From assembly GCF_001194135.2 (NCBI RefSeq), contig NC_068993.1, forward strand, positions 12,885,284 through 12,949,283: a stretch of 64,000 nucleotides of DNA, written 5' to 3'. The stretch comes from Octopus bimaculoides (Eukaryota). Under the pieces are notes generated by a model. It searched no databases. It had not been told where the DNA came from and saw nothing but the letters and a program-made list of their open reading frames with translations. Below, one piece after another: positions 26,861 through 51,242 of the stretch (positions are counted from its first letter, which is position 1; every line of letters begins with the position of its first letter). Made by a program: the position numbers and the translations under genes.

Positions 26861-26865
26861 CTGAT

Positions 26866-26940
26866 GCGTTAAAAATAGTAGCCAAATACCCTCTCGCATC
26901 ACGTTCTACCCTTTCATTAAAAAGAATAACGTAATCGTGG
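26866..26940 (+). repeat. Unclassified dispersed repeat ('aaatagcagccaaat.ccct' family)
   Basis: Related degenerate segments at about 27090-27115 (+), 33365-33430 (-), 48510-48550 (-), 57525-57570 (-) and 57740-57775 (-). Confidence 0.4.
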
Positions 26941-27740: not shown

Positions 27741-27794
<54 letters not shown>

Positions 27795-28080
27795 CATATT
27801 TACTCGATATACGAGTCTCCGTGATAAAAAAAAAAAAAACTGGACGAGATAGTCTAGCATGAGATTACCATTTATCGCTCAATCTGCTGTGGCCTAGATG
27901 GGACTAAACAATGCCATCACTACTAACAAAACAACTATCTTTTAACGTTGTTATTGTTCAGCTCAGTCAGATGGAATCCAGTACACATATAATAAAATCC
28001 TTTCAAAGCGTGACCTGCATATTAGTTTATCTATATATACGACTGGTAATCTAGGAATACATTTTCGAACGTGTCATTTT

Positions 28081-31700: not shown

Positions 31701-31794
31701 GCAAACATTCTAAAGTTCTCCGAAATAGAGAGAACAGTAATGTTACACTCATATGTATGTATACACACACACACACACACTTTTTCTTTCTCTT

Positions 31795-31825
<31 letters not shown>

Positions 31826-32479
31826 ATCTCTCTCTTTCATACGCACATACACACACAAACACCATTGTATGCGGTTGGGATAAAACAAGTGCGCCGTTTG
31901 TAGCCCGGTCCTTCGTCAAAAAAGAAAAGAAGATGAATATTCAACCCCTCCCTCCCTCTCTCCTTCCTTCCCTCTCTATCTATCTTTCTCTCTCTTTCTC
32001 TTTCTCTCTCTCAGATTTGCACTGAAACTTTAGGGCAACCATTTCCAAACGGCATGTTAACGTCTTGAAAAAAATGTTAATACTTTCAAACCTATAGAAT
32101 TTGGAAAACTAGAAATTTTGTAAATTCAATTTCATGGCAACAACAGAGCTACGAACCGCTGATTTCTTGGCTGGTTGTTCCAGGAGTCTCCATTCTGCTA
32201 TCTGCTACATATACATATATATATTATAACGGCATATATGCGCATATAAATTCACTGTCTCTGTCACTCACACATACATACACACACTCTCCCCCTCTCT
32301 CTCTCTCTCTCATATTTATTACAAATTCTGTTTCACATATCTTATTACCTTTTTCACTTCTTTTTCTTCCTATTCATTCTCGTCCTTTTAGTTATATCCC
32401 GCCTGTAATAACTATATTTATTAAGGCTTTCTCTATTTGTTGTCGTTGCTGTTTGTATTTCGTTTATAGTTACTGATGT

Positions 32480-33200
32480 AGCAGCAGCAGTGGTAGTAGT
32501 AGTAGTAACTGTTATTGTTGTTTGTTTTCGTTCTGTGTCATTATTAAGTCATTTCCAGCTGTGTTACAATTAACGTATTTGTTATATGATTAACAAAATA
32601 CTTTAATTTTGAAATAGTTTCATTTGATGGAATGAATGCGATGGTTTCGGAGGATGTTGCTGTTGGTGGTGGTGGTGGGAATATTGAAGTTGGCGATGGT
32701 GGCAGTGGTGGTGGTGGTGGTGAGAGTAATAATGTATCTAATGATGTTGACTGCATTTGGTGGTGGTGGTGGTAGTGGTTCTGGTAGTGGTGCTGGTGGT
32801 GGTAGGAATATTGAAGTTGGCGATGGTGACAGTGGCGGTAGAGACGGTGGTGGTGAGAGTAATAATATATCTAATGACGTTGACTGCATTGGTGGTGGTG
32901 GTGGTGGTGATGGTGGAGTAGTACTGTTTCAGATGCTGTTGCTCCTGATAATGGAGGTGTTGATGGCGGTGGAAACGATATTGAGGATAGTAACGATGCA
33001 GGTGATAGTGGCTGCATTTAGGATAGTGTTGACGCTACTCATGATAAAAGTGATGATAGTGGCGGAGACTGGTAACGATGGCGATGGTGGTGGTCATGAG
33101 GATGGTGATTGTGATGATAATGTTGGTGGTGCTACTGTTGATAGTGGTATTGGTTGGATGGTAACGCTGATGATAGTGGTAGTAGTTAGGCAGCTGTGTG
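32480..33200. repeat. (GGT)/(GAT) low-complexity tract with an internal duplication of about 127 bp period (32679 / 32806)
   Basis: 'gaatattgaagttggcgatgg...gagagtaataat.tatctaatga.gttgactgcatt' occurs twice. Confidence 0.85.
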
Positions 33201-33605
33201 TTGATATGGATGGAGATCGTGGTGTTTTATTTTCTCTCGAGTGCTTTTGTCGTTTAACCCTAGGCCGGCCTGATTGGGTGGACATTCATAGAATGACAAA
33301 CATTTTCTTTTTTCCATTTTCTTCTTTGTTCAAGTATAATGCATCCGAAACTATATTACCTTATATGTCGTCTTTCTTAAAATAGCAGTGACTGATTTTG
33401 AAGGAAATTTAGCTATTATTTCTAACAGACTGAGTAGTAATCTCGCCGAACCTTCCCCAATGTCTCATTATGATCGTCTTGTTAGCAGTTGTATTTGGAA
33501 TGATGTCAGTGCATAAATTGCGAGTTGTCGTACGTTTAACTCTAAAGAGTATATATAAATATATTTTTTAAAATATCAACAACATTATGACCGGGCGATA
33601 ACAAT

Positions 33606-34310
33606 TTACTTAACGAAGCCGCCTTCAGCTTCCACCGAGATCCCACGACGTCTCTGGAACCTAGAGCATGCGTGCCTCAGTGTCTCCCTTGGAAGATCTT
33701 CGAACACCTTGATCTTCGTAACCAGTTTGGCTTTGGTGTTGCAGGCAACGTAGTTGGTGTATTTCTCAACAGCGTCTCACACATCGTAATCCATGGAATT
33801 TCAATCGGGTCGAATAAGCGGCTAGAAATTGGTGCTGGTGAAGAGGCAGAAAATTTCCGGCAACCACTTCTAACTTTTTTTCGAATATATAGCAAGTAGC
33901 TGAATTCTGCTGTCACACATTTGGCCTTCCGGTAGCAATCCTTCCAAGCCGGTGATTGACTACTGTCTCCAGCAGCTTCACATAGGGGTCTGTACTGAGC
34001 CTAAGGCCCAGTTCATCAATCGTTGGATGAATTCCGGCGTGAGGACGCAGTCAGAGCGCCTGCTGTGTCTCTTCTTGTAGGCCATGGCTTCGTTGTCTCA
34101 GCTGCAGCTGTCCATATCTTGCAGCTTTTACGGTGTATGCAGAACATTGCGCAGCAGTCATGATGTCGGCATTTTGATACCGGGCGCAAATCTTTTCCAG
34201 TATTCAAACGGCTTCTAGTTCTCTATACCAGCTTTTTCACAATTACAACTTTCATCTTTATGCTCTTCAACGCCGTTGACTGTTCACCAGTACATCAGGC
34301 TGTTCCTGAA
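33606..34310 (-). pseudogene. Internally deleted Tc1/mariner transposase, maT/DD37D-like
   Basis: Manual translation: N-terminal 'DIMTAAQCSAYTVK...HSRRSDCVLTPEFIQ', then 'GLRLSTDPYVKLLETVV...RIATGRPNV*QQNSA', then 'NSMDYDV*DAVEKYTNYVACNTKAKLVTKIKVFEDLPRETLRHACSRFQ...VEAEGGFVK*'. Stops and frameshifts are present. Confidence 0.85.
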
Positions 34311-34904
34311 ATGTGGAAAAAAAAATGGGAACATAAAAAGTCATCAAATTTAGCCCGAACATCCAATATATCATCGTTGCCTGCAGTCTGATGAAACTTG
34401 TTAACAGCTATTGGTTTGCACGATCACAGCTTTCCTGAAACGAAAACAAATAACGATAACAACAAATGCCTATTACAAAAATAAAAATCTAGAAAAAAAA
34501 CTATGGTTACCCTTCTTTATCTAATTCATGTTTAACAAAGGTTACCGTTGGCAATTGCAAAATGCTTATTTTATAGATACAACGAATAAACTATTAATCT
34601 AACTTAGATAACCTGTCGGCAATGCGTTTAGTTGATCCTTTCATCTTTATTTTATTACTATTAGTTTATAGTTTAGTAATAACATGCTCGAAACAAAACA
34701 ATTCAACCTAAGTAGAAATAATGTTTTTCAATGTTTTTAAAAGCCTTACACGATTTTGCTGGCGGTTTTCAAGGCATGAAAATGGATTTATCCCTAATAG
34801 CAGTTACAGGGATTGAATTGAATACAAAAACGTAAAAAAATAGAATTTAACGAAACATTGCAAGATATGTTGTCTACTGCGCTACAGTTCCTGCAATATT
34901 TTAG

Positions 34905-34939
<35 letters not shown>

Positions 34940-34959
34940 TTCAAATATCTGTTCATGGA

Positions 34960-35590
34960 CAGCATGTTTTGGGTTGAGTGTGCAACAAGTACTTATTTTA
35001 TCGATTCTGGTAGGATGAAAGGCAAAGTCAGCCTTAACGGAATTTGAGCTCAGGATGTAAAGGCAGATGATGCCGCTAAGCATTTTGCCCGGTGCGCTAA
35101 CGATTCTGCCAGCTCAACGCTTTAATGATGATAATAATAATAATAATAATAATAATAATGTTGTCTGTTATAAGCACAAGGTCTGAAAATTTTGCGTGGG
35201 GGACAGTCGATTACATCGACCCTAGTACTCAACTGATACTCATTTTATCGACCTCGAATGATATAAGTCAACCACAGCGGAATTTGATCTCAGAACGTAG
35301 CAATCGGCAAAATACCGCTAAGCATTTAGTCCAGCGTGCTAACGATTCTGCCAGCTCACCGCCTTAAATTATAATCTTTTCTACTCTAGGCACAAGGCCT
35401 GAAATTTTAAGGGTGGGGACTAGTCGATTATAACGATCCCAGTGCTTCACTGGTACTTATTTCATTGACCCCGAAAGGATGAAAGGCAATGTCGACCGCG
35501 GCAGGATTTGAACTCAGAAAGTAAGGACGGATGAAATGCCGCTAAGCATTTCATACAGCGTGCTGATCATTCTGCCAGCTCGCCGCCTTA
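34960..35590 (-). mobile_element. Head-to-tail trimer of SINE family A (34960-35124; 35165-35366; 35375-35590)
   Basis: Three consecutive reverse-strand units, each ending on + with 'aacg/gatcattctgccagctc..gc(c/t)tta', separated by (AAT)n or AT-rich linkers. Confidence 0.9.
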
Positions 35591-36192
35591 ATACAAGAGA
35601 AACTCCAACTAGGGCCAATGAAGGAACCCCACAGATCCAGGTTTACCCTGACCAACAAAGTTACGAGCCCTCGCTCCTGCTCTAATAACGTTTCTTATTG
35701 TTTACAAAGCCAGAGATGTTGGAGACAGTTCAAATGTACGGGGTTTTCTTTAAGCGGAATAAAATTGGGATGGACTGGACAAAAGCAATAGACAATAAGA
35801 TGTCTAGAAAAAGTCTTCGCTGGGTTGGTGGGAAAAACCAGTGTCATTTGAGGATATATTAATAATAAAATATTAATAGTAATAATAATAATCTATCTGC
35901 TTTCAATATATTAACACTTTCAGTTGTAATGTTCTACAGCATAAATATGAAAAGTACTTAGCTGATTGGGAATATTTCAGACAGGATTAATGTAAAAGCG
36001 CGAGGCACAATAGGAAATCCATACAAAGGATTTGGATTCTCATTGTTCTTAAGGATACAATAATTTTAAATGCAATTTTAATTCTAACGGATTAAACTGT
36101 TTCTAATCCTTTAATTCTGTACCCATGCACTTAGGTAAAGTATACAAAACACACACACACACGTATTCATACTGTGAATTTGTCTATCTATA

Positions 36193-36232
<40 letters not shown>

Positions 36233-36237
36233 TATAC

Positions 36238-36376
36238 AACGGGCTTCTTTCAGTTTCCATCTACCAAATCCACTCAAAAGGCCTTGGTCGGCCCGACGGT
36301 ATAGCAGAAGATACTTGTCCAAGGTGCCACGCATGTTGTTGAGAAGCAAGCTTCTTACCACACAGTCACTCCTGCG

Positions 36377-36380
<4 letters not shown>
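36238..36380 (-). mobile_element. SINE family B (internal deletion)
   Basis: 'acgggcttctttcagtttccatctaccaaatccactc...cttgtccaaggtgccacgca...cttaccacacagtcactcctgcgc'. Confidence 0.85.
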
Positions 36381-36412
<32 letters not shown>

Positions 36413-38474
36413 CTTGTGCGCATCAGTCTATCATCTTTACTGTCATTCATTTAATTCCTCCGCTGACATAGTAGATAGTGTTAATGCTGCTGCTGCTACT
36501 ACTACTACCACTGCTGCTGCTGCTAAGTTTAATGACCGAAAGGAGGTATTTGCATGGAATAGTCTAATAGTACTTTTGGTTTGGAGGAGGTATGTCTTCA
36601 AGTGATGCAGTCTATGCTGTTTGCGTATATATTTCTGTCGGTGTATATTTGTATTTGTGCGTCTGTATGTAAGTTTTTGAGTAGATGTATGTGTGTCTAT
36701 ATGAAGTTGTATATCAATGAGTCGGCATGTGAATGCGCACCTCTCTGTTTGCATGCGTGCCCAATACGTGTTTGAGGCTATCATGCAATGAAAGGTATTT
36801 ATCCGTTTACACTTGCTTGAATAACTGTGTGCTGAGGGGACAGAAATATCCATTGATATTTTGAAACGCTCAGAATCACGGTTCAATCCCCAGCAAACGG
36901 AAAAAAATAAATGAAAATCCCTCAGGGAGTTTGGAGGACACACTGCTCCAATTTCTTCGGACAGTGAGCAACGATGACCAAAATGTATAGAGCATGTATT
37001 ATTTTAATTGCTATTACTGGTGGTCAGTCACTGTCCAAAGGAACGTTTTATATAAAATGGCGAAATTGTAAGGGGAGGAGGACAAACAAAGAGTGGAAAA
37101 GGGCTGAGACGGAAACGGAGAGGCTGAAGTGGCGTGGTGGTGGTGGTATGGGATAAAAGGGAAGCTGTAAAATAGTAAGATGGCTGAAGAATTAATGGGA
37201 ATAAAAGTCAACAACGAAGTAATATATATGTGTGGGTGGAGTGCTTGTCGTTGTATGCGTTTGAGTGTTACGCTTTTAACAAATTTATCTGTCGAACAAA
37301 CTGGAAGACAATCGAAATCTATGAAATAATAAAATATTCGAAGACATGATAGAGCTGCATCGTGAAGATCTATTAACTTTTTACTGGAAAATAAATAAAA
37401 ATCATTTGTATAGCATAGTATTTCCATAGTTTGCCTAGTACGAATGCATAAAATAATATATAAAGCGAACTAACATTGGAGTCTCTTCGTGCTTTCTCGT
37501 ACTACAAGAAAATCATATTCTGACAGTTTAAAAAGGATGGAAGACATTACATTAGACAATGTTGTCTAAGATTCCATGTTTTAATAACAGATTGGATGGT
37601 CACGGCTGGAATGCATTTGATCATAGATTTATAGGTTTATTTGTTCAATCATAACTGACCAGAGATAGGAACTAAAACACAGCCATATCTGTTTGATGAA
37701 TTTCATGAGACAAGAAGTTCATGGGACCTTATTGATTGTAATCTTGCAATATCCTCCAAAATGCAGTTTCCAAAATAAGCCCGAAATATGTTTTATATAC
37801 TTAATATTATTGTAGTATAATAAAACATCATCGTTCTGAGATGCACCGCCTTTTTTATAATTAAATATTATTAGGGGGTGCATAAAATATTGTTGAAATG
37901 TAATTAATTTATTGTAGATAAATTTTAACAGCAAAATCTTATATGGACCCCACAAGGTTCAAAATTACTGATTTAGAATCTATTTGTTCATTGAGTTTTC
38001 TTCTCAATAGCAGTGTTTACAGTATAGGCAGAGGATGATTATTGCGAAGGTGTAGTATAGGTAGACGACAGTCCCTGAGAAGAAGCTATAGCTCATAGCT
38101 TCAGCCTTAAGGAAGGTGAATTGATGTTGTTTCTAGTGATTCTTCTAGGAGTAGTCGTCGTAGCAGAGATACTCTTTGCATCTGTAGAAATAATAGTAAT
38201 AACGGAGAAGTTGTGGAAAGATTTTATTTATGTATTTTTGTGTGAATTTTGTTTTTCTTATTATTTCGCTGTCCAATAATATAAATGGATGGACATTATA
38301 CTTAACTAACTCTTTACGTGGTCAATACACTTAACTGTCCAGTACGGCCGAATTGGGTCCAGCCTATATTAGTTCACGCCACACCAGACAGAGAAATCAA
38401 ACTTTTACACGTGTATACTCCACTTCCTTATTGCTTATCTCCACCGGCCCCTCCTCTCCCTCTCTCTGTATGCG

Positions 38475-38524
<50 letters not shown>

Positions 38525-39400
38525 NNNNNNNNNNNNNNNNNNNNNNNNNNNNNNNNNNNNNNNNNNNNNNNNNNNNNNNNNNNNNNNNNNNNNNNNNNNN
38601 NNNNNNNNNNNNNNNNNNNNNNNNNNNNNNNNNNNNNNNNNNNNNNNNNNNNNNNNNNNNNNNNNNNNNNNNNNNNNNNNNNNNNNNNNNNNNNNNNNNN
38701 NNNNNNNNNNNNNNNNNNNNNNNNNNNNNNNNNNNNNNNNNNNNNNNNNNNNNNNNNNNNNNNNNNNNNNNNNNNNNNNNNNNNNNNNNNNNNNNNNNNN
38801 NNNNNNNNNNNNNNNNNNNNNNNNNNNNNNNNNNNNNNNNNNNNNNNNNNNNNNNNNNNNNNNNNNNNNNNNNNNNNNNNNNNNNNNNNNNNNNNNNNNN
38901 NNNNNNNNNNNNNNNNNNNNNNNNNNNNNNNNNNNNNNNNNNNNNNNNNNNNNNNNNNNNNNNNNNNNNNNNNNNNNNNNNNNNNNNNNNNNNNNNNNNN
39001 NNNNNNNNNNNNNNNNNNNNNNNNNNNNNNNNNNNNNNNNNNNNNNNNNNNNNNNNNNNNNNNNNNNNNNNNNNNNNNNNNNNNNNNNNNNNNNNNNNNN
39101 NNNNNNNNNNNNNNNNNNNNNNNNNNNNNNNNNNNNNNNNNNNNNNNNNNNNNNNNNNNNNNNNNNNNNNNNNNNNNNNNNNNNNNNNNNNNNNNNNNNN
39201 NNNNNNNNNNNNNNNNNNNNNNNNNNNNNNNNNNNNNNNNNNNNNNNNNNNNNNNNNNNNNNNNNNNNNNNNNNNNNNNNNNNNNNNNNNNNNNNNNNNN
39301 NNNNNNNNNNTCAAAAGAGAATGATGTACGTACTTCAGGGAAACGGAAGTACACCCCGTGGTGAAGTAGATAGACGCAGGCGATGATGATGATGATGATG

Positions 39401-39433
<33 letters not shown>

Positions 39434-39434
39434 T

Positions 39435-39805
39435 TTTCTATTATAGGCACAAGGCCTGGAATTTGGCGGGAAGGAACTAGTTGATTAGATCGACCCGAGT
39501 GTTTCACTGGCACTTAATTTATCGATCTTGAAAGGATGAAAGGCAAAATTCGACCTCGGTAGAATTTGAACTCAGAACGTAATAACGGACGAAATGCCGC
39601 TCAGTACTTTGTCCGGTGTGCTAACGATTCTGCCAGCTCACAGCTTTTCACCGCCTAAATAATAACAATAATAATCCTTTCCACTGGAAGGACAAGGCCT
39701 CAAATTTGGTAGCGAGGTGACTAGCCGATTACATCGACTCCAGTACTCAACTGGTAGTTACTTTATCGTTTCCGAAAGGATGAAAGACAAAGTCGACCTC
39801 AGCAG
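39435..39805 (-). mobile_element. SINE family A copy (39435-39657) plus partial copy (39670-39805)
   Basis: Reverse-strand core 'atttatcgatcttgaaaggatgaaaggcaaa' and head; (AAT)n run adjacent. Confidence 0.85.
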
Positions 39806-40762
39806 AATAGTAACAGCTACTACTTCTTGGTTACCGTCGATAAAAATTAATGCTGCTGTTAAAGATTGTAAAATACTTGATAAGTATGATGACGGTGTGG
39901 TATGTTTCTTCTTCGAACGGGAAAATGTGGCTTTTGTTAGAATCATTGTTTTGAAAAAAATAATTTAACAAAAAACGATTTCTCGGCACCCAGTTTTAAT
40001 ATTCTCTGTTCTTTACTGTGTGTTAACCATATTCCTCTGAACGGATATATATATATATATATATATATGTAATCTCTTTATCTTCTGAACGATTGCAAGT
40101 GACGAGAAATTCAAAGAAACGACGGAATGAGTCATCAGCTGCTTCTAAATAAATAAATTGTACCATTCGTATTGATTATTCTTTAATTCGTTTGTAACAC
40201 CAAATGTTTGTGCGTGCATATNNNNNNNNNNNNNNNNNNNNNNNNNNNNNNNNNNNNNNNNNNNNNNNNNNNNNNNNNNNNNNNNNNNNNNNNNNNNNNN
40301 NNNNNNNNNNNNNNNNNNNNNNNNNNNNNNNNNNNNNNNNNNNNNNNNNNNNNNNNNNNNNNNNNNNNNNNNNNNNNNNNNNNNNNNNNNNNNNNNNNNN
40401 NNNNNNNNNNNNNNNNNNNNNNNNNNNNNNNNNNNNNNNNNNNNNNNNNNNNNNNNNNNNNNNNNNNNNNNNNNNNNNNNNNNNNNNNNNNNNNNNNNNN
40501 NNNNNNNNNNNNNNNNNNNNNNTCTGATTTTAACGCACAAGATACAAAGCTCTGCCAAATGACTGATGCCGTGCCAAGAATTAGTATAAATGAGATTTTA
40601 AACCGATAAGGACATTGACAAGACAAATATTCCTTTTAGTCGTTTTTAATAATGTTGTTATTGTAGTTGTCTTCGTCGGCCTTGTTTATTGATTTATTTA
40701 TTTTTTTGTTTTCAATAGGATATAGTAAAGTGTAGTATAGAACACATACACGCACACACACG

Positions 40763-40820
<58 letters not shown>

Positions 40821-40922
40821 CATATATATATGCATATAGCAATACTTCGCTTAATCTTTCGATTAACGAACCCACGTTTTAGTGTTGTTTTATTAAGGTT
40901 ATAAAAATAAACTATTTAATTG

Positions 40923-41090
40923 TGCAGGCTTCGGTGTGTGGCTAAGAATTTAGCTTTACAACCACGAGGTTTCAGGTTCATCACCTCGGACAAATGTCTT
41001 TTATTCTTTTACTATAATCCTCGGCCAACCTATGCATTGCGAGAGAATTTGGTGGAAGCTGATTGTGCGGAAGTTCGTCGTAAAAAATGC
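40923..41090 (+). mobile_element. SINE family B (degenerate)
   Basis: 'ggtgtgtggctaagaatttagctttacaaccacgaggtttcaggttca...cctcggccaacc...gaatttggtgg'. Confidence 0.65.
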
Positions 41091-41777
41091 GTCCGTGTGT
41101 GTGTGAGAGAGAGAGAGAAAAGGTGCTGTGCGTGAAGGTACTGCATGTATCTATTCTGTTCTCACTTCCTCGCTTGACAAAGTAGTGTCGTTTAAAAAAT
41201 ATATACCGGTGTCGACTGAAATCCTTCAAAAGCAGTGCCCCAGCATGGCTGCACTGTAATGTCTGTACCTTTCGATATTAACCTTTAGTACACTGCAGGT
41301 GCATCATGTCACTGTATGAGTCTTCTCCCTTGTAGTAACTGTACATTGGCAGAGGAAATAATGCAGTGTGCTAAGCGTTAAAGAAAGCAGGCTATTATTT
41401 GAAGATAGCTGTCTCTAACAGGTCGGACAGTTATCTAGAACAACATTAGCAAAACTTTTTAGTCGAGTGTACCAGGAGTTTAGTTTATTTATTCCATCTT
41501 CCTATATCTTTATCATATGTATTTTACATTTAGGTAAATGCTTAAAAATTAACCTATTATAAACGTGATAAATCAGATAAATCACGTCAAACACGTCACA
41601 TTTGATTGCGAAATGTGAGTCAACGCCGCGTTATCACTGAACAAGAAATTATCTTCAGGGCCTCTTACAATACTATGCTGTTACGTTAAGTTTGTAGTAA
41701 AATAGCTGTGTATGAATTTAACATGATGTGGTTGCTATTCCAAGCTGCTAGAAGGACGATTTAGTAGTTCCTTTGTT

Positions 41778-41808
<31 letters not shown>

Positions 41809-42169
41809 ATGTATGTGTGATGTCTTGCTGTTGTTATTTTGTCTATCAATGCTAGGTGTATTGTCCTATTATTTAATTAACTTCATCACAGAGACGTACT
41901 AATTAAATTAAATACAAAATTACGAGACAGACGCATAGAAAAGAAAATGTGCCCAAGACATTGAAACAAGTTTGTGTTGGTGTATTTTGAGACAGTGGGT
42001 TGGTGGTTCTATGTGTGTGATGGTGGTGGGTGTTTATGTGAGCGTGTGGGTGTGTTTGTCAGTTTTTGCTATTTTTTATTAATCAGTAATTATGTCCAGA
42101 CATTCTCTCGTAATTTACTTTCATTTGAAGAATTAACCAGACAGACAGGTAAATATACCTTGTACGATT

Positions 42170-42203
42170 ACTTACCTGAGTAAACGAAAACGGTTAATTA
42201 GTG
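42170..42203 (-). other. Candidate recursive splice site (3'ss/5'ss fusion), minus strand
   Basis: Minus strand reads CACTAAT-taac-cgttttcgtttact-CAG|GTAAGTAA, with no AG for about 105 nt upstream. Confidence 0.35.
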
Positions 42204-42563
42204 GTGAGTTTTCAATTGAAGATATACAGTAATTATATATATATATATATACACACATATGTGTGTGTGTGTGTGTGTGTATTCTTACACACAGACTAAT
42301 ATTCTCGTACACTTATCTAAAATTCAACGTTACCATAATACTAAAGTTGATCTACAGTTACTGATTCTCAGAAGATTGTTCCGTGCCTTCGTCTAAATGG
42401 AAGACTTTTTTAGAGATGTATACGGGTTTCTCAAAAGACTAGGCTCGTAGCCTCAAATTCTGAAGCTCAAATTACAAAAAGAGCCTTATTTTTTGTTTGG
42501 AGGATCACCAAGAAACTGTAAAATATCTTGCAAATTTTTTTATTCTTTTATATGTTTCAGTCA

Positions 42564-42596
<33 letters not shown>

Positions 42597-42606
42597 AGCT
42601 ACCTGG

Positions 42607-42810
42607 TGGCGCGTTTTGCTCTTGAGTAAGACATTTTATTTTAAGTTGCTCCAGTCGAGTGAGTTACCGAAAATGAGTAGTGGCTGAAAACTACGTTAAG
42701 GGTACGCGTGTCTGTGTAGTACTCAGTCACTTGGGCGTTAATTCCACGAGTAGGCTGTTCCGTTGATCAGATCAACTGGAATAGTCATCGTCCTAACCGA
42801 CGTAGTACCA
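42607..42810 (+). mobile_element. SINE family D (CORE-like body)
   Basis: 'ttgagtaagacattttattttaagttgctccagtc' plus the tail shared with 470-577. Confidence 0.7.
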
Positions 42811-42837
42811 GTTTTGTTTGCGTATCTATATGCAGTC

Positions 42838-42887
<50 letters not shown>

Positions 42888-43676
42888 AAACTGTAGCAGA
42901 CTGTTACGAAATCGGTGTTGAAACATATTGGATTGACATAGTTTTCTGCGTCAGCTTTCTAGAATATAGTTCCAAATTTGATGTCTGTACTTGTAAAAGG
43001 TAACCAATGTTTTACCTGTGTGCGTGAGTNNNNNNNNNNNNNNNNNNNNNNNNNNNNNNNNNNNNNNNNNNNNNNNNNNNNNNNNNNNNNNNNNNNNNNN
43101 NNNNNNNNNNNNNNNNNNNNNNNNNNNNNNNNNNNNNNNNNNNNNNNNNNNNNNNNNNNNNNNNNNNNNNNNNNNNNNNNNNNNNNNNNNNNNNNNNNNN
43201 NNNNNNNNNNNNNNNNNNNNNNNNNNNNNNNNNNNNNNNNNNNNNNNNNNNNNNNNNNNNNNNNNNNNNNNNNNNNNNNNNNNNNNNNNNNNNNNNNNNN
43301 NNNNNNNNNNNNNNNNNNNNNNNNNNNNNNNNNNNNNNNNNNNNNNNNNNNNNNNNNNNNNNNNNNNNNNNNNNNNNNNNNNNNNNNNNNNNNNNNNNNN
43401 NNNNNNNNNNNNNNNNNNNNNNNNNNNNNNNNNNNNNNNNNNNNNNNNNNNNNNNNNNNNNNNNNNNNNNNNNNNNNNNNNNNNNNNNNNNNNNNNNNNN
43501 NNNNNNNNNNNNNNNNNNNNNNNNNNNNNNNNNNNNNNNNNNNNNNNNCATATATATATGGTTCTAAGAGTCTGTTTCCGGACGAAAAGACGACATTGAT
43601 GGCTAGGATTGTCAGTCCATTCTTTATACCTTTCTTCTTTTCTTTTTTTTTATCATTTGCGAAGACACCCTCTTAA

Positions 43677-43714
<38 letters not shown>

Positions 43715-44169
43715 GCACGTACCTTTGCATAGAGAGAGAGAGAGAGAGAGAGAGAGGAAACAGCTATTCTTTCGTATGTGTTGTCTGAAACAGACGACTG
43801 TGTCCTAGTTAGATCGTTTATTTAATAAAGAAAATTATTTTTCATTTATATGTATTAGTTCTTCATGTTTAATTTGGATTTATGCCGTAATTAACGTCTC
43901 GAGACTCTCTCGGTTTCGTTACCTGAATAAAAATAATTATAGAACTTATTTATTATTCGAGCACTTTAAGCCGGAAAGCATCGTGTGGGATACACTTATT
44001 GCTGTTCAAATAATCGTGTCTTGAATACATACATGAACACAAATATATGCGCAACGTAATACAAAACAAGATTTTTTTTTTATTAACTGACATATCGCAT
44101 TCAAATTGCTCATTTCTATTTAAAGTACCACTATTTCTAATACAAAGTTACTGTTCAACATACACTCTA

Positions 44170-44683
44170 TAGCAAGCGACCATCTTTGAAAAAAAAAAAA
44201 ATTCAGATGTGCTCGGTTGTGCCTATTGTTGCACACCTTGCACGAGCCATTAAATCGTTTTCTCGATAACTGGCTATTCGACCAAAAAGGTATGTCAGAC
44301 AACAGGCCTCCACTGACCAGCCCAATTTGCAGATTGTCTGATATTTGGCCAGATATGTGTCTGGTCACGCATTGTCATGGTGAAAGTGGATTATTTTCAG
44401 ATATACGTTCCGCCTCTTCCTTCTAATGGCTGTCTAAGCTTTCTGATATTCCCAACGTACCATTCACTGTTCATGGTATAGCCACGTTCCAAAAGATCAA
44501 GAATAACGTCTTTGTTGATTCCAAATCAGTCATCATGACATTTTTTTTTTTTTTTTTTTTACCTATTGCTAACTCTTGAGATTTTCAGGATTTCCTTAAA
44601 AGTTATGATGCTATTCGAAGAACTGGGCCTTGGTTTCCGGAACTTAAAATATGCTCACATTTTCATCCCTTGTCACAATAATT
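44170..44683 (-). pseudogene. Decayed mariner (DD34D-type) transposase, catalytic region
   Basis: Manual translation: 'IIVTRDE...PETKAQ' (cf. IVTGDE...PETKRQ), 'VILDLLERGYTMNSEWY', 'RRKRRNVYLKIIHFHHDNA*PDT...ICKLGW' (cf. HHDNARPH...LGW). Frameshifts, stops and a poly-T insertion are present. Confidence 0.85.
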
Positions 44684-46354
44684 TTACAAAATCTTGGTGG
44701 ATATCGGGCAAACTTGGCCTCGGCGAGATTTGAACTATGCAATAAAAAGAGAACCGTTAAGAGCCAGAACATCCACAAGCCCAATGCTATAACGATTCTG
44801 CCATCTATTTGTTCGTCTATCTGCCTATCTATCTATTTATCTATCGCTCTAATAATAGTACTGATTTTTTATATTGTCATGCAGTCCTCAAATTTTAGAG
44901 ATATATAGTCGATTAAATCGTTCCCAATACAAGCAAGTACTTACTTTATCCGTATCAGAGAAATAATATATCTATTTATGATCATACTGTGACTTGTACC
45001 AGAACTATGCGGTAAAAAAAGGATCTGTAATTAAATACAACATTGACTCACATTTAGTCAAACGATTTTACGTTTACCGAAGCTGCTGCTGCTGCTGCTG
45101 CTTTCATTACGAGGCAGTTTCCAGACATTGGGTGGCCATCTCCTAAAATGGCAGTAGCTTTCTATGTGTGTATGTGCTATGTGTGAAAGCATTTGTGTAT
45201 GATCATGTTTATGAATACACTCACATACGCACATATACATGCATGCTATTGTGTGTTTGTATCTTTATGCCAAAACACATAAACATATATGAACGTAGGG
45301 ATATGTTTTGGCGTGAGTTTGACAAATATTTGAAAACCCCCAAATACATAGCTGAGTGTTATGTCTAAAACCATGTGTCAAGTTTGTTTATTTATTATTT
45401 TTTGCTGACGTAAGAAAGAAATACTCTTGGAGCTGCTATTCTTACTTTTGTTTTTATGTGTGTGTGTATGCCCGTGTATATGCATGTGTGGCTGCGTTTG
45501 TGCGCGTTTACGTGTATAAGTGAAATTCTATAAATATGTGTGTGTTCTGGCACTTTAAAATGAAGTATGAAAACAGTAAGATGAATCATACTAAGAAAAT
45601 GACATTTTATACTAAAACCGTTTCTGAAGTAGGAACAGGGCCAGGAATGTAGTATAAGGTAATTGTTGATTATATCGACTCACAGTATATAAAATGGTAA
45701 TTTATTTTATCAATACGAAAATGAAAAGCAATGCTGACCACTCTGGGATTTGAACTTAAAACGCCAAGATCCGGAGCAAACACAATTACTCTTTTATTTC
45801 AGTCGTTTTGTGTTTCCAGTAATCGACCGCAATCATCGACTTTTCTGCGCATGCAGGAGATTACAAGAAGACTTTAGGGTAGTGTTAAGAATTCTTTGCA
45901 GTATTGGCCCGAAATGTCTTTATTGTGAGTTCAAATCTCGTCAAGATTAACTTTGCGTAGTAACCTTCTCGGGTCCATAAATGATATGTGGTCAACCACT
46001 TTACCTGTCTGTCTACCAAGCTATTTCCCAGTTTCTCTGTACCTTTATTGGAATTGCCGTGTGGAGAGTGATAGACGGTCGCCCAAAGCGTCCTGTTCTT
46101 CGGTATTAGAAAACACTTGCGCAAGAGACTAAACCATCGATTCTGATGGCAAGCCTGATATGCTTTTAAAAACGGCCAAAGACTGCTCAATGAGCAGCTC
46201 AGCGCAAGTAGAAATATAGTAGAATATATATATTGATATAATAATTATAACGAATACATTTGGTACACGTGCCAAGATAGTAGCTCTTGCCCACTAATTA
46301 CATTAAAATTTAAGTTTTTCTACCCACTATATAACAAACTGAAATAATTAAGGT

Positions 46355-46540
46355 GTTGGGCTCGCGATCTTTAGGTGTGAGGGTCGATTTTCGGCGCGAG
46401 CGGTGTGCCGTGACCTTGAGCATCGCACTTTTTATTTCAGTCTGCAGCTCATCACACTCAACTGGATTTGAGAGCCTCTATCAACTGGAGATTAACCCTG
46501 TTACGAGTTAGCATCCCTCTGGTGTTAGGATTATTGTACT
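46355..46540 (+). mobile_element. Degenerate tRNA/CORE SINE
   Basis: 'gggctcgcgatc...gggtcgatttt...gtgaccttgagcatcgcactttttatttc...aaccctg...gagttagcatccc' resembles the 20330 element. Confidence 0.5.
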
Positions 46541-47471
46541 CTCGGCCTAACAGCTTTGAATATGTAGTTATGTTCAAGCTCGAAGCAGATTTTATATTAG
46601 GTATGTGAGACGCTAGCAAATGTGTACCGCATTCTTATCATACTCCGGAAGTGTGTGGGAGAAAGAATTGCTAGAGAGCCGGACAAAATGCCTTTCGGTT
46701 ATGCATAACACGCATTTTTATTCTGAGTTCAAATGCCACTAGATCCAGTTCGTCTTTACCCGTCAGAGAAAATTGCACTCGACTTAATAACTACACCCCT
46801 CCTCTTATGCTTAACGCTCATTCCCAGTGTAAAAAAAATGCTATTAACCTTCGTAAAAGAGATTGCAGGCGTTCATATGTGAGAAACAGTATATGCCTAT
46901 TTAAAATAACTATCGCGCTGTAACTGTTTTAAATTCCACTCTCAATTTAAGGTCAAATTACATTTCAAACAAATACCGTTGAAAAACTATTTTTTTTTTT
47001 TTTACAGTGATACATGAACACGTTTTCAAATGAAATTTAGTCGAAATAATGTTTTGCATGATACAACAGCGTGTCAAATATATACCATAATCAATATAAA
47101 ACCAAAATATTTAACCAAATATAAATTTCTCATAAATCAGATTTCTGTCAGTGTATGAGTTTGTGTGTGTGTGGAGAGGTGCTTGTATAAGATTGTGGAT
47201 ATATATATATATATATATATATCTTTTATATGTAAGCATGGTTATGAATATCGTATTTAGTATAACGCATGGGGTGTACTTCAGCTGAAACATACATTCT
47301 GACTCTAATTCCCGAGCATTTTGTGCAGAAAATGTATTAATAACATAATGTCTCCAATTGAAGTCTATCTATCTATCTATCATATATAGGTCAGTGTATG
47401 TACGTATAAATATATAACACAGACATTCAACTGTTTCATGTAATATTATATATGTACTTCAGTATTGTTTA

Positions 47472-47510
47472 TACTAATGTCCATATTTTCTTTGCTTTTT
47501 CAGGTAAGTA
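47472..47510 (+). other. Candidate recursive splice site (ratchet point), plus strand
   Basis: TACTAAT branch point (47472-78), tract 'ccatattttctttgcttttt', CAG (47501-03) immediately followed by GTAAGTA (47504-10). Confidence 0.45.
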
Positions 47511-48963
47511 CGTTGGTGAATTTATTCGTTTATTTGAAGATTATATCAGGTAGGGTATCTTACCGTTTCTATACGTGGATGTGTACATGGGTATGTGTGT
47601 GTGTGTGTGTGGAATAATCAAGCTACACTCGTAAATAGAAACAATTACTTTTGAATTTATTTATTTTAGATACATATGTGGATCGATTTACAAGTAGATT
47701 GATTCCATTCGCCACCGAGTAAATCGAAATTGTGTAAAACGAAGTGGGGGGGGGGGCAAGATTTTAAAGATAATATCTATTGAAGATACAAAATAAAATT
47801 TAAGCAATGTTTATAAAAATAAGCATTATACATCTGCAGACATGCATGTATCGTTAACAAACTCGCACAGATGTGTTATTTACGATTAAATTTGAGGATC
47901 TGATCAAAGACTTTGCAATTCAAAAAGGTAGGAGGAAACTTTTCAGATGTAAGGTGGAAATATACAAAAATACATATTATTCTCCCTCTTACTGTTTCAT
48001 TTCGTTTTGAAAGGTAAAAGTTTATTTTATGGATTGTTATTGCTTATATTTTGAATTACGTAATCTCTTATGGGCGCACCAAAATCTTTTTAAGTGCTTA
48101 GGCCCACGATGGGTCTTAATCCGGCCCTGCCAGTGACTGAAACAAGTAAAAGTTAAATGATATAACGATATACCCTACGTATATTTTATCCTACATTTTA
48201 AGGAATATATAATCTTATATATCGAGGTGTTATGTAGTTGCCATCGACCTGTTAAGAGACTTACGAAAAATTTAGTAGCGTTAATAATAACTTTAGAAAA
48301 CTATTTATGCAGTAAGTTATGACTATACAGATCGCTGGTGGCGAGGGTGATGGCGGTGAGTGTTACTGTTGTTGATTAGTACCAGATCAACACTTACAAA
48401 GCAGGCATATGATCTAACGCATTACATCCACGACCACCCCCTCTTATTTTTTTGAGCAGTACTGCACCCATACCTACATTACCCAGCCAATTATTTATAA
48501 TACTGTAACGTGTGGTTTTACGGAAATTTAGCTGCTATTGACAGCATGTCGAAATCTCGACATGCTGTTGCTAACATTTAGAACCTCCTGCAGTGATTCC
48601 TGTCAGCACATGTTTGTTTATATTGGAATTAAAAACACTGCAGCGGTGGTGCTGGTGATACTGTAGTTGCTGTTGTTGTTTAACACTAGGACAGTTGTAA
48701 TTGAGCACGTCTGCGATGAACACATTTCCAACTATGACTGTCACATCTTACCAAGCATAGTACTACGTTATTTAATTTATCAATCCTGGTCTTTGTTTTG
48801 GTTTGTACTTTCTTTTTAAGTGCCTGAAAGCGCTTCAACGTTAAATTTAGTTTCCTAAATATCTGCAGATAACTGAACTGAATTTTAAGAGGTTTCAGCC
48901 TACAAAAATCATGAACACTATCCTTACTCTTCTGTCAAGGATATTAGGAAAAAATATTGACAT

Positions 48964-49120
48964 AGGCGCAGCAGTAGCTCTGTGGTAAGACGTTAGCTTG
49001 ACAACCACATGGTTCCGGATCCAGTTCCACTGTGTAGCAACTTGGATGAGTGTCTTCTATCATTGCCTCGAGCCAACCAAAGCTTTGTAAGTGGATTTGG
49101 TTGAAAGAAACTCGTCGTGT
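48964..49120 (+). mobile_element. SINE family B
   Basis: 'aggcgcagcagtagctctgtggtaag...caaccacatggttccggatccagttccactgtgtagcaacttgg...gtggatttggttg'. Confidence 0.8.
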
Positions 49121-49344
49121 TCGAAACGCGGTGTAGATAAAACGGGGGACAGCTGGTGAAGGGAATGTTCTTTATGTTGCCTGTCTCGTTTCTCAATTTG
49201 TTTCTCTCGTTGTTCGAAAAAAAGTTCGTTTTCCATGCTCTTGTCTTTTATGTTCTCGTTTCTCATTTTCTTCATGTTTTTTGGACGTCCTGTACCCACA
49301 TACGCATGTGTATATACATATACATGTAGGCATGTACGTGTGTG

Positions 49345-49623
49345 CGTGTGTGTCTGGTGTGCTAACTATTCTGCCAGCTCCCCACCGTACTTCTTTTTCT
49401 ACTGATAATCCTTTCTACTGGAAGCACAAGGCCTCAAATTTGGGGAAGGAATTAAGTCAATTACACCAACCCCAGTGTTCGACTAGGACTTAATTTGTCG
49501 ACCCCGAAAGGATGACAGGCGAAGTCGATTCCGGCGGCATTCGAACTCAGAACGTGAAGACAGGCGAAATATCGCTAACGACATCGCCCGGCACGCTAAC
49601 GATTCTGCCAGCTCGCCGCCTTA
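49345..49623 (-). mobile_element. SINE family A (49385-49623) plus head fragment of a second copy
   Basis: Reverse-strand full unit ending 'gattctgccagctcgccgcctta' on +, preceded by a second 'gtgctaactattctgccagctc' head. Confidence 0.85.
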
Positions 49624-49859
49624 ATAATAATAATAATGGTGGTGGTGATGGTGATGGTGGTTTTTGATTTTGTCTTCATGTTTTTTGGACGTCCTGTACC
49701 CACATACGCATGTGTACATATACATGTAGGCATGTACGTGTATATACACATGCGTATGTGGGTACACCTCCACTATATCGATCTCAATATTGAATTGGTA
49801 CTATATGCTATCAATAACGGGATTAACAACAAGTTGATCACGGCAAAATTCGAATTCAA

Positions 49860-49908
49860 ATAGGAAAGATTCAGAATAAATATTGCAGTGTATTTTGGGC
49901 AACCCTGT
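49860..49908. mobile_element. Solo Tc1/mariner-type terminal inverted repeat
   Basis: Ends '...gtgtattttgggcaaccctg|TA', i.e. TA|CAGGGTTGCCCAAAATAC on -, a typical Tc1/mariner end. No partner end was found. Confidence 0.4.
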
Positions 49909-50387
49909 AATGATACAGTAAGAAGGTATCTTTAACGTGATCACGCAGTTTTCTTGATATTACAGCCAGATCCACTATTAGATGTACGTTTATGACTTGC
50001 TCTGTTCTGTAATTACCTCGACACAGTTCTTTAGGTGCCTCTGACGACAAATAAATGGAAAATACTGTTTGTCTATTATTGTTATTTAGCTTTACATCTT
50101 CAGACTAGAATAGACAGACCAGTGTGGTAGGGACTGACATAGAAAAAAGTATTTATTACATTAGAAATGGCGGTCAGATAATTTAAGATAACACTGATCT
50201 ACTGAGCAAGATTATTCATCATTGTGGAGATGTGCCATATACTTACGTATATAATTGAATTCGTCTAAAGATTCGCTGGACGCACACGCATGCACACATG
50301 CAAACACGCACATTCTCCTGCGCTGCTTGCTATTTGTCACACACGCCTTTGTATGTTTACGGTGTATTTTATTTTAATGGTTGTTTC

Positions 50388-50432
<45 letters not shown>

Positions 50433-51196
50433 CTGTAGTAGTGGTAAGTCTTTTATTCGTATTTTCTCTTTTGAAACCTTACGGCACGTACTGACCCGCT
50501 TGAAAATGAATAGATCACCAACTTGGCTTAGTGGCGTTTTACAACCCGAATGATCCTTCTGAAAACAAACAATTTCTAAGAGAGAAAGAAACACACGAAG
50601 AAAAATAAAAAAAAAAGAGAGAGAGATAGAAAAAAGAAAGAATGTTTTTGAATGAAGGTTAGAGAATATAGTTGTAGTACGGTGGGATGGGCTAAAATAA
50701 CTGAACAGAGTATGATAGGAATAACAAATAGAGAAGAAGTTATAGACAGACTGTGGAATTGATAGCTGATCAAATAATGGCGTTTACAGAAAGCAATCAG
50801 GATTCAACTCCAGCTGTAACTACAATAGACTATAGACGATCAACCCACACTCAGGCACGCACCCCCTCTCTCTCTCACTCTCCATCTTTCTCTCACACAC
50901 ACATACACATACTCTCACAAACGTGCGCACACTCACAAGAATGAGCCAGTTAGGGTGCCAATGCGTAGCTGTTTTATCAGCTAGAAAGAGTAGTGAAATG
51001 CTCTTTAAAACGCGTTTTTTTTTTTAAACATGTGACAGTCTTTAAAACAGGATGAGAAGCAAAAACCGGGAAGGTCGCGGATGAAATGCCTTTCATCTTA
51101 GGTCTGCTCAATGAAGGCCTCTGTGAACTAAATAATAACCACCAACAAAAGCACTTCTCTCTCTCTCTCTCTCTCTTTTTCTCTCTCTGTATATAC

Positions 51197-51242
<46 letters not shown>

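What the first reader, a model, noticed from the sequence alone, without database searches (positions are those of the whole stretch)
47472..47556. Textbook recursive-splicing (ratchet) site on the + strand, with a possible RS-exon
Seen: TACTAAT at 47472-78 (branch A about 26 nt upstream), an AG-free pyrimidine tract, and CAG (47501-03) fused directly to a consensus donor GTAAGT (47504-09). A weaker donor CAG|GTAGGG lies 46 nt downstream (47549/50). Established: YAG|GTRAGT zero-length exons mediate recursive splicing of very long introns in Drosophila (e.g. Ubx) and of long neuronal genes in vertebrates, where a cryptic RS-exon follows. Inference: this window is the interior of a giant + strand intron processed stepwise, a mechanism I am not aware of being characterised in cephalopods. 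Rough composition estimate: the bare 9-mer CAGGTAAGT is expected about 0.4 times in the window by chance, so the evidence rests on the added branch point and tract.
Basis: partly seen in the sequence, partly recalled or inferred. Interest (0 to 1): 0.75.

Follow-up and report, generated by a model that had tools for sequence, protein, structure and literature searches.

The report
Used recursive-type splice site in long intron
The fused acceptor-donor motif at 47503/47504 really is used as a + strand splice acceptor: assembled transcripts join an exon from outside the window exactly onto GTAAGT.

Summary
The motif is exactly as described: TACTAAT, an AG-free pyrimidine tract, CAG|GTAAGT at 47503/47504, and CAG|GTAGGG 46 nt downstream. 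Its acceptor context ranks among the best 8 of 6314 AG sites in the window, so a chance composite is expected about 0.0025 times per window.

In three runs of one study (two samples), assembled contigs carry the same foreign 20-21 nt, (A)AATGTCTTGATCTTGCTTTC, joined at 47503/47504 and running on through GTAAGTACG. None of the four runs covers 47392-47502. Contigs of DNA runs pass straight through the site. The 20-mer is not in the window, so the partner exon is more than 47 kb away or sits in an assembly gap.

RNA-type runs hold 1.3 to 3.4 times more of the 10 kb after the site than of a 10 kb stretch 12-22 kb before it. The DNA control holds the same share (0.79) of both. Poly(A)-type runs show nothing at the site.

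This supports + strand transcription, acceptor use and a sawtooth-like step. Donor use at 47504 was not shown. A 10-fold pile-up over the first 100 nt relative to 0.4-0.9 kb downstream keeps an ordinary or terminal-exon reading alive. Host gene, library type and taxon are unverified. Verdict: probable recursive splice site, a new member of a known kind.

The parts
47472..47478 (+). Branch-point consensus TACTAAT (predicted branch A at 47477, 26 nt upstream of the AG)
   Evidence: Sequence. It is the only AG in the window with TACTAAY at -15..-45 together with a good pyrimidine tract. Branch use was not tested.
47479..47500 (+). AG-free polypyrimidine tract
   Evidence: 15 of 18 pyrimidines at -20..-3; the nearest upstream AG is 41 nt away.
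47501..47503 (+). Acceptor CAG; the splice junction lies after G47503
   Evidence: Contigs of X13, X15 and X16 match the window only from 47503 rightwards. To the left they carry the same foreign 20-21 nt. DNA contigs of X9 (47202-47710) and X19 (47204-47611) are colinear through the site.
47504..47509 (+). Donor GTAAGT that would be regenerated after the first step (ratchet-point donor). With the joined exon end it reads TCG|GTAAGT.
   Evidence: 7 of 9 match to CAG|GTAAGT after joining; all six intronic positions are consensus. Its use as a donor is inferred, not observed.
47504..47549 (+). Candidate cryptic RS-exon, 46 nt, out of frame
   Evidence: Its length and layout match the ~50 nt cryptic RS-exons of Drosophila ratchet points (PMC8605326). 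The contigs read through 47549/47550 unspliced, so inclusion through this donor is not evident.
47550..47555 (+). Downstream donor CAG|GTAGGG (7 of 9 match) that could define the RS-exon
   Evidence: chance of such a donor in the 30-80 nt interval is 3.7%.
47504..47920 (+). Stretch with raised RNA depth in study P5 directly after the junction
   Evidence: Depths for the contig 47503-47611, then the later contigs in order (the second X15 value is from a contig starting at 47900):
- X13: 316, 161, 31, 34, 11
- X15: 132, 12.6, 3.4, 24, 15.5
- X16: 69, 27, 7.6, 9.7, 4.9
Upstream unique contigs lie at 2.6-5.7.
47792..47797 (+). AATAAA, a candidate poly(A) signal that could end a truncated isoform
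   Evidence: Motif only; common in AT-rich DNA.
1..47503 (+). Inferred first intron segment, removed by splicing to 47503 (at least the part from the last assembly gap onwards)
   Evidence: The foreign 20-mer is absent from the window at up to 3 mismatches. The window has no convincing coding ORF. RNA-type runs hold 6-39% of the words in 25501-35500.
47504..64000 (+). Inferred second intron segment (transcribed, absent from poly(A)-type RNA)
   Evidence: RNA-type runs hold 17-57% of the words in 47504-57503, against 0.79 in the DNA control. Poly(A)-type runs hold at most 0.04.

Best explanation
The window lies inside a long + strand transcription unit, and 47503/47504 is a ratchet-type recursive splice site.

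Step 1 (shown): an exon lying outside the window, ending ...CTTGCTTTC(G), is spliced to the acceptor CAG at 47503. This step presumably uses the TACTAAT branch point and the pyrimidine tract. It removes at least 47 kb of upstream intron, or less if the exon hides in an assembly gap.

Step 2 (inferred): the joint recreates a donor, TCG|GTAAGTAC, at the very start of the remaining intron. This donor is then paired with the next real exon's acceptor, so no local sequence reaches the mRNA. The 46-nt unit ending at CAG|GTAGGG would serve as the cryptic RS-exon that lets the site be recognised by exon definition.

Side branch (inferred from depth only): in the samples of study P5, part of the molecules stall or end within a few hundred nt after the joint. 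This could happen at the AATAAA at 47792, and it would give a stable truncated RNA.
For: (1) Motif quality and rarity.

(2) Junction: X13, X15 and X16 (two samples) each have a 129-130 nt contig with the same foreign 20-21 nt joined at 47503/47504. There is no P5 contig on 47392-47502, nor on 47004-47502 apart from a 98-nt X15 piece at 47122-47219. The joint is canonical only for the + strand, because the removed side ends in AG.

(3) Not genomic: the DNA-type run X9 and the relative's DNA run X19 are colinear through the site without a break.

(4) The foreign 20-mer is not in the window and is not a variant of the local upstream sequence.

(5) Sawtooth-like step, as word shares in 25501-35500 against 47504-57503:
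- X17: 0.24 to 0.57
- X20: 0.14 to 0.47
- X30: 0.06 to 0.17
- X41 (relative): 0.07 to 0.14
- X13: 0.37 to 0.48
- X15: 0.39 to 0.55
- X16: 0.34 to 0.47
- X18: 0.28 to 0.40
- DNA control X9: 0.79 to 0.79
X17 has no unique contig in 45736-47563, then nearly continuous contigs from 47564.

(6) No reads at the site in three poly(A)-type raw runs, and at most 0.01-0.04 word share in about a dozen other RNA runs. The downstream sequence is therefore not a stable mRNA exon there.

(7) The contig stops at 20-21 foreign plus 10-11 local nt, which equals one 31-mer. This fits a graph branch caused by the exon's own donor also reading GGTAAGTAC (inference).

(8) The architecture equals Drosophila ratchet points with cryptic RS-exons (PMC8605326; PMC6110457; PMC2773006).
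Against: - The second step was never observed. There is no lariat or branch evidence for a 5' end at 47504, and no raw total-RNA reads.
- The library type of studies P5 and P6 is unknown ('?' and 'RNA?').
- P5 depth is about 10 times higher over the first 100 nt after the joint than at 0.4-0.9 kb beyond it. A simple sawtooth over tens of kb does not predict this; it looks more like an exon or a prematurely ended RNA.
- X18 (same sample as X13) and the P6 runs lack the junction contig.
- X20 does not cover the first 700 nt after the site.
- Conservation was testable only in a relative 5-6% diverged, where identity over 47463-47527 is uninformative.
- An equally good-looking composite on the opposite strand, at 42177, has no support. 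This shows that look-alikes do occur.
Confidence: 0.62

Rival explanations
1. Ordinary exon acceptor. 47503 is the 3' splice site of a normal exon that merely happens to begin with GTAAGT. The exon would be an alternative terminal exon, an intronic polyadenylation isoform ending near 47.8-47.9 kb, or a long non-coding RNA exon. No second splicing step takes place.
For: In P5, depth over 47503-47611 (316, 132, 69) is 9-10 times that of the contigs starting near 47900 (31, 12.6, 7.6), reproducibly in three runs. AATAAA lies at 47792 and ATTAAA at 47885. The contigs read through the 47549/50 donor unspliced.
Against: - An exon starting with the exact hexamer GTAAGT has a chance of about 3e-4. Adding a 7-of-9 donor 46 nt on contributes a further factor of 0.037.
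- Three deep poly(A)-type runs have zero reads there, and about a dozen other RNA runs hold at most 1% of the local words.
- P6 runs cover the downstream 10 kb well (0.47-0.57) but show no exon-like peak at 47504-47563.
- Coverage continues for at least 10 kb beyond the putative poly(A) sites.
Confidence: 0.2
2. The junction contig is a lariat-branch read, not an exon joint. The foreign 20 nt would be the sequence just upstream of a distant branch point, read through the 2'-5' link onto the intron's 5' end at 47504. This would be evidence for the second recursive step rather than the first.
For: The order [foreign]-GTAAGT... is what a branch read gives. The foreign end CTTTC(G) would fit yUnA if the last base is a misread branch A (branch motif as quoted from PMC6110457). 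Coverage starts exactly at 47504 with nothing upstream.
Against: - Branch reads are extremely rare: 46 in 10.2 billion reads in the fly data quoted. Here the joint assembled in three runs.
- The contig stops after 20-21 foreign nt rather than 30. That fits an exon followed by its own GTAAGTAC donor, not a branch region.
- A lariat would not give a 5'-weighted depth profile.
Confidence: 0.07
3. Artefact or DNA-level event. The joint would be a structural variant or insertion in the sampled animals, or a chimera made by reverse-transcriptase template switching across the short repeat GGTAAGTAC.
For: The library type of P5 is unknown. The inferred 9-10 nt identity between the two donor contexts is the kind of microhomology that favours template switching.
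Against: - The breakpoint falls within 1 nt of the predicted AG|GT. An unrelated breakpoint would land that close by chance in about 3 of the 4591 positions laid.
- The same joint appears in two samples.
- Depth runs from 0 to 316 within 100 nt, which is not DNA-like.
- The colinear form is absent upstream, although a low-frequency chimera would leave it dominant.
- The two DNA contigs examined at the site (X9, X19) are colinear, and the DNA-type runs of the species hold most of the reference words around it.
Confidence: 0.05
4. Chance motif without function in non-coding DNA.
For: A genome of a few Gb should hold on the order of 100 such composites by chance. A second composite sits on the - strand at 42177 with no RNA or conservation support.
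Against: The junction contigs begin exactly at the site, and there is a coverage step.
Confidence: 0.03

Closest known systems
Drosophila intronic ratchet points with cryptic RS-exons (Ubx, kuz, Bx; Hatton 1998, Burnette 2005, Duff 2015, Joseph 2018; as summarised in PMC8605326, PMC6110457, PMC2773006)
   Same: Consensus (Y)nNCAG|GTAAGT. Position deep inside a very long intron. A short (~50 nt), out-of-frame unit follows, ending in a weaker donor. There is an exon-to-ratchet junction and a rise of RNA coverage after the site. Nothing from the site appears in poly(A) RNA.
   Different: - A different phylum, if the cephalopod assignment holds.
- The second step, lariats and deep conservation are documented in flies but not here.
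- The fly sites do not show the strong pile-up of RNA over the first 100 nt seen here in one study.
Vertebrate RS-exons in long neuronal genes (Sibley 2015; Blazquez 2018; cited in PMC8605326 and PMC6110456)
   Same: The acceptor is followed by a regenerated donor. Exon definition works through a downstream donor, and the two donors compete. The RS-exon or an extended form may be kept in a minority of transcripts and yield truncated or unproductive RNAs.
   Different: Vertebrate cases were defined with total-RNA sawtooth profiles, junction reads and antisense-oligonucleotide tests. Here only assembled contigs of unknown library type are available, and the host gene is unknown.
Alternative terminal exons and intronic polyadenylation isoforms
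   Same: An acceptor inside a long intron is followed by a few hundred nt of elevated RNA and an AATAAA.
   Different: Such exons do not begin with a perfect U1-complementary donor, and they should be visible in poly(A) RNA. None of about 15 poly(A)-type runs shows this one.

Membership tests
Recursive splice site (ratchet point) | Juxtaposed acceptor and donor: pyrimidine tract, AG|GTAAGT | tested here: met
   The acceptor context is among the best 8 of 6314 AGs, and the 9-mer is perfect.
Recursive splice site (ratchet point) | Lies on the sense strand inside a long intron (more than 10-20 kb) | tested here: inconclusive
   The strand is fixed as + by the canonical joint. The partner exon is absent from 47.5 kb upstream, and no exon signal appears over 47504-57503 in the poly(A)-type runs. 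However, 15 assembly gaps could hide an exon, and no annotation was available.
Recursive splice site (ratchet point) | First-step intermediate: upstream exon joined to the ratchet point | tested here: met
   An identical joint appears in contigs of X13, X15 and X16 and is absent from DNA contigs. Caveat: these are assembled contigs, and the library type is not on record.
Recursive splice site (ratchet point) | Second step: the regenerated donor is used (lariat with a 5' end at the ratchet point; site sequence absent from mRNA) | tested here: inconclusive
   Site sequence is absent from three raw poly(A)-type runs and from other RNA runs, but host-gene expression in those runs is unknown. Lariat reads could not be searched, because the only raw reads were from runs with no coverage.
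Recursive splice site (ratchet point) | Sawtooth RNA profile: minimum just before the site, jump after it | tested here: inconclusive
   The word shares and contig maps agree with it in 8 RNA-type runs, and the DNA control is flat. The measure is coarse, unstranded and based on contigs.
Recursive splice site (ratchet point) | Cryptic RS-exon of about 50 nt with its own downstream donor | tested here: met
   A 46-nt unit followed by CAG|GTAGGG, a 7-of-9 match with a chance of 3.7%. The feature is as described in PMC8605326.
Recursive splice site (ratchet point) | Evolutionary conservation of the SA|SD core above flanks | tested here: inconclusive
   Organism B is identical over 47463-47527, with changes at 47432, 47461, 47462 and 47528. 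At 5-6% divergence this is expected by chance. No more distant genome was reachable.
Ordinary or terminal exon | Present in mature poly(A) RNA with a defined 3' end or a used donor | tested here: not met
   Zero reads in X24, X26 and X27. Word share is at most 0.01 in other RNA runs for 46500-48500. The contigs read through 47549/50. Not met in the runs available, but the expressing tissue may be missing from them.

The most novel reading that the evidence does not exclude
Recursive splicing operates in a lophotrochozoan with giant introns, which would extend the mechanism beyond flies and vertebrates. At this site it doubles as a decision point. After the first step the transcript either re-splices from the regenerated donor, giving full-length mRNA, or ends a few hundred nt downstream, giving a stable truncated RNA. 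The 10-fold pile-up in one study would be that truncated RNA.
Probability: 0.25. Interest if true: 0.7.

Novelty: new member of a known kind. Interest (0 to 1): 0.55.

Why it matters
Recursive splicing has been documented in Drosophila and in vertebrates. The paper library held nothing on it for cephalopods or other molluscs.

Cephalopod genomes are large and rich in long introns, especially in neural genes. How those introns are removed accurately is an open practical question.

A site with a direct first-step junction gives a concrete, testable entry point. The tests are to map the 22-nt exon tag, design RT-PCR for the intermediate and the lariat, and then scan the genome for sites of the same grammar. 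If confirmed, it would argue that ratchet-type splicing is an ancestral bilaterian solution rather than a fly speciality.

Tried and rejected
- Repeat or transposon origin. blastn of ±400 nt around the site against the window finds only itself, and the - strand look-alike shares only the 11-mer TCAGGTAAGTA. Only single DNA contigs of X9 and X19 cover the site. Rejected.
- Known RNA genes that could explain the RNA pile-up. No Rfam family reaches threshold in the window, only low-complexity palindrome hits at 49695-49767, and there are no tRNAs. Rejected.
- Exons or a host gene inside the window. ORF listing and six-frame stop-free segments gave only low-complexity and SINE-like translations. 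No host gene was found.
- Poly(A)-type raw RNA runs X24, X26 and X27 gave no read at either composite site. Most reads laid were partial microsatellite matches, and the 'joints' there (for example 45187 to 47592) are repeat artefacts without GT..AG ends.
- The idea that the foreign 20 nt is a diverged copy of the local upstream sequence. Its alignment score of 15 is below random hits of 22 elsewhere in the window. Rejected.
- Inferring the strand from A-runs or T-runs next to coverage patches. Both readings fitted, so it was abandoned.
- Spliced-leader trans-splicing. It does not fit a contig that stops at 20-21 nt, and from my own knowledge it is not known in molluscs. Not pursued.
- I ran no further search on 16-48 aa peptides from the site. 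An exact hit would not reach significance, and a hit was unlikely.

Full report
**The observation**

- TACTAAT lies at 47472-47478, with the predicted branch A at 47477, 26 nt before the AG.
- An AG-free pyrimidine tract follows at 47479-47500.
- CAG lies at 47501-47503 and GTAAGT at 47504-47509.
- A second donor-like CAG|GTAGGG lies at 47547-49/47550-55, which delimits a 46-nt unit.

The 9-mer CAGGTAAGT occurs twice in the window, once on each strand, against 0.34 expected. Eight of 100 shuffles reach two. The bare 9-mer is therefore unremarkable.

The context is not. Of 6314 AG dinucleotides on both strands, only 8 combine at least 83% pyrimidines at -20..-3, an AG-free zone of at least 25 nt and a CTRAY branch motif. 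This site is the only one with the full TACTAAY.

With P(GTAAGT|G) = 3.1e-4, the composite is expected about 0.0025 times per window. A donor matching at least 7 of 9 positions in the 30-80 nt downstream interval has a further chance of 3.7%. For a genome of a few Gb this still allows on the order of a hundred chance composites (my extrapolation). The motif alone could not settle the matter.

**What the surroundings are**

- The window is AT-rich draft assembly with 15 gaps totalling 4675 N. It is full of microsatellites and SINE-like repeats and has no convincing coding ORF.
- No Rfam family or tRNA is present.
- The 800 nt around the site are single-copy in the window.
- Only a single colinear DNA contig covers the site in the same species (X9, 47202-47710) and in a close relative (X19, 47204-47611).

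**RNA evidence**

Three deep poly(A)-type raw runs (X24, X26, X27; about 6% of each was read) have no read at all on 47392-47588. What they appeared to show were partial microsatellite matches. About a dozen other RNA runs hold at most 1% of the local words. Mature mRNA in the sampled tissues therefore does not contain the site.

Two other studies of the same species behave differently. These are P6, guessed to be RNA, and P5, of unknown kind. A study of the relative, P17, behaves the same way. All three cover unique, non-coding sequence across the window.

The decisive result came from P5. In X13, X15 and X16, which represent two samples, a 129-130 nt contig matches the window only from 47503 to 47611. 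To the left it carries the same foreign sequence, (A)AATGTCTTGATCTTGCTTTC. The molecule therefore reads ...CTTGCTTTC-G-GTAAGTACGTTGG....

- No P5 contig covers 47392-47502, or 47004-47502 apart from a 98-nt X15 piece at 47122-47219. Coverage runs on with only short gaps from 47503 to about 49100, and again from about 49700.
- The 20-mer does not occur in the window even with three mismatches.
- It is no more similar to the local upstream sequence than to random places.
- The removed side ends in AG, so the joint is canonical for the + strand only.
- An unrelated breakpoint would land within 1 nt of the predicted AG|GT by chance in about 3 of the 4591 positions laid.
- DNA contigs pass through the site unbroken, so the joint is not genomic.

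I conclude that 47503 is a used + strand 3' splice site. Its partner is an exon outside the window, or one hidden in an assembly gap.

A detail fits this reading. The contigs stop after 20-21 foreign plus 10-11 local nt, which is one 31-mer. That is what an assembly graph does if the foreign exon is elsewhere followed by the same GGTAAGTAC, namely its own donor. This is an inference. A polymorphism in the exon could break the contig as well.

**Coverage step**

The table gives the share of the window's sampled 31-mers held by each run.

| Run | 25501-35500 (12-22 kb upstream) | 47504-57503 (downstream) |
|---|---|---|
| X17 | 0.24 | 0.57 |
| X20 | 0.14 | 0.47 |
| X30 | 0.06 | 0.17 |
| X41 (relative) | 0.07 | 0.14 |
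| X13 | 0.37 | 0.48 |
| X15 | 0.39 | 0.55 |
| X16 | 0.34 | 0.47 |
| X18 | 0.28 | 0.40 |
| X9 (DNA-type control) | 0.79 | 0.79 |
| Poly(A)-type runs | at most 0.04 | at most 0.04 |

X17 holds 0.34 of 46500-48500. Its contig map shows that all of this lies to the right of 47564, with no unique contig in 45736-47563. The pattern is intermediate coverage far upstream, almost none just before the site, and most just after it. That is what a sawtooth at a recursive site predicts for + strand transcription. The measure is coarse, unstranded and based on contigs, so I rate it as consistent rather than proven.

**What does not fit a pure ratchet**

In P5 the depth of the first contig after the joint is 9-10 times that of the contigs starting near 47900, reproducibly.

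| Run | 47503-47611 | Contig starting near 47900 |
|---|---|---|
| X13 | 316 | 31 |
| X15 | 132 | 12.6 |
| X16 | 69 | 7.6 |

The (TG)n at 47594-47611 is shorter than a 31-mer, and the DNA contig across it has normal depth (6.9). The high values are therefore real. A sawtooth over tens of kb would not fall tenfold within about 0.4-0.9 kb.

Part of the joined molecules must therefore end or be processed within a few hundred nt. AATAAA at 47792 and ATTAAA at 47885 are candidates. This keeps alive the reading that the acceptor opens an ordinary or alternative terminal exon.

Several points count against that as the whole story.
- An exon beginning with a perfect U1-complementary GTAAGTA is improbable.
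- The site is absent from all poly(A)-type runs.
- P6 covers the downstream 10 kb well but shows no exon-like peak.
- Coverage continues for at least 10 kb.

The contigs read through 47549/50 without a branch, so the 46-nt unit is not detectably spliced out through its own donor.

**Mechanism proposed**

- Shown: + strand use of the acceptor at 47503, joined to a distant exon.
- Inferred from established spliceosome behaviour and from the fly and vertebrate precedents (PMC8605326, PMC6110457, PMC2773006): the joint regenerates TCG|GTAAGTAC, U1 binds it, and the rest of the intron is removed in a second reaction. The 46-nt out-of-frame unit with its 7-of-9 donor serves exon definition, as a cryptic RS-exon does.
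- Inferred from depth only: a fraction of molecules terminates shortly after the joint.

I put 0.62 on recursive splicing, 0.20 on an ordinary or terminal exon without a second step, 0.07 on the joint being a lariat-branch read (which would itself prove donor use), 0.05 on an artefact or structural variant, and 0.03 on a functionless motif.

**Conservation**

The relative differs from the window by about 5-7% around the site. It is identical over 47463-47527, with changes at 47432, 47461, 47462 and 47528. At that distance a 65-nt identical run is expected by chance, so the test is uninformative.

**Comparison with what is known, and novelty**

The site meets the sequence grammar, the RS-exon architecture and the first-step-intermediate criterion of fly ratchet points. 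Intron context, sawtooth, second step and conservation are inconclusive.

The library holds no paper on recursive splicing in cephalopods or other molluscs.

A specialist would find it plausible rather than startling. Its value is that it supplies a concrete junction sequence with which the mechanism can be tested directly.

**Limits**

- The library types and the taxon are coded or unknown.
- The evidence for the joint rests on assembled contigs, not raw reads.
- The host gene is unidentified.

Noticed in passing
window 42171-42206, minus strand: A second recursive-type composite lies on the opposite strand: cactaat, 21 nt of AG-free pyrimidine-rich sequence, then ctcag|GTAAGTAATCG, with AAG|GTATAT 17 nt further on. 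It shares only TCAGGTAAGTA with the + site. It is one of only 26 of 6314 AGs with a comparable acceptor context. It has no poly(A)-type RNA reads, and no contig of the relative matches it at 85% or better. It is antisense to the transcript shown here, so it is probably a chance look-alike or belongs to an antisense RNA.
   Followed up: partly
window 48729-49829: A contig of the relative's RNA-type run X41 joins 48728 directly to 49830. The ends are non-canonical (CA..AA), so this is not a splice. The skipped 1.1 kb holds high-copy SINE-like elements and a roughly 65-nt direct duplication (about 49278-49340 and 49680-49745). It is probably an insertion or deletion difference between the two species.
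   Followed up: partly
window 49695-49767: A near-perfect palindrome of TG/CA/TA-rich sequence gives sub-threshold hits on both strands to repeat-derived miRNA families (mir-297, mir-466, mir-3149; 38-48 bits against gathering scores of 85-100). It looks like a low-complexity hairpin, not a credible miRNA.
   Followed up: no
window 48974-49743 and 50336-50500: These are very high-copy dispersed repeats. Contig depths reach thousands to tens of thousands in both DNA and RNA runs, and many RNA reads carry mismatches typical of other copies. One element ends in an (AAT)n tail at 49637, and an (ATT)n tract lies at 50387-50433.
   Followed up: no
whole window: T exceeds A on the + strand (AT skew -0.047), and there is no GC skew. 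This direction is the one reported for sense strands of mammalian introns (from my own knowledge). It is weakly consistent with + strand transcription but is confounded by repeats.
   Followed up: no
window 2332-2625 (-), 8407-8775 (+), 36174-36605 (+): Copies of one SINE-like element recur in both orientations, recognisable by the pseudo-translation ...FHLPNPL...SRRxLxKVP....
   Followed up: no
window 46600-46734: An RNA-type run labelled as a third organism (X25) holds a 161-nt contig identical to the window here. The stretch overlaps a repeat (depth 100-400 in the DNA runs), so this is probably repeat expression or a labelling matter.
   Followed up: no
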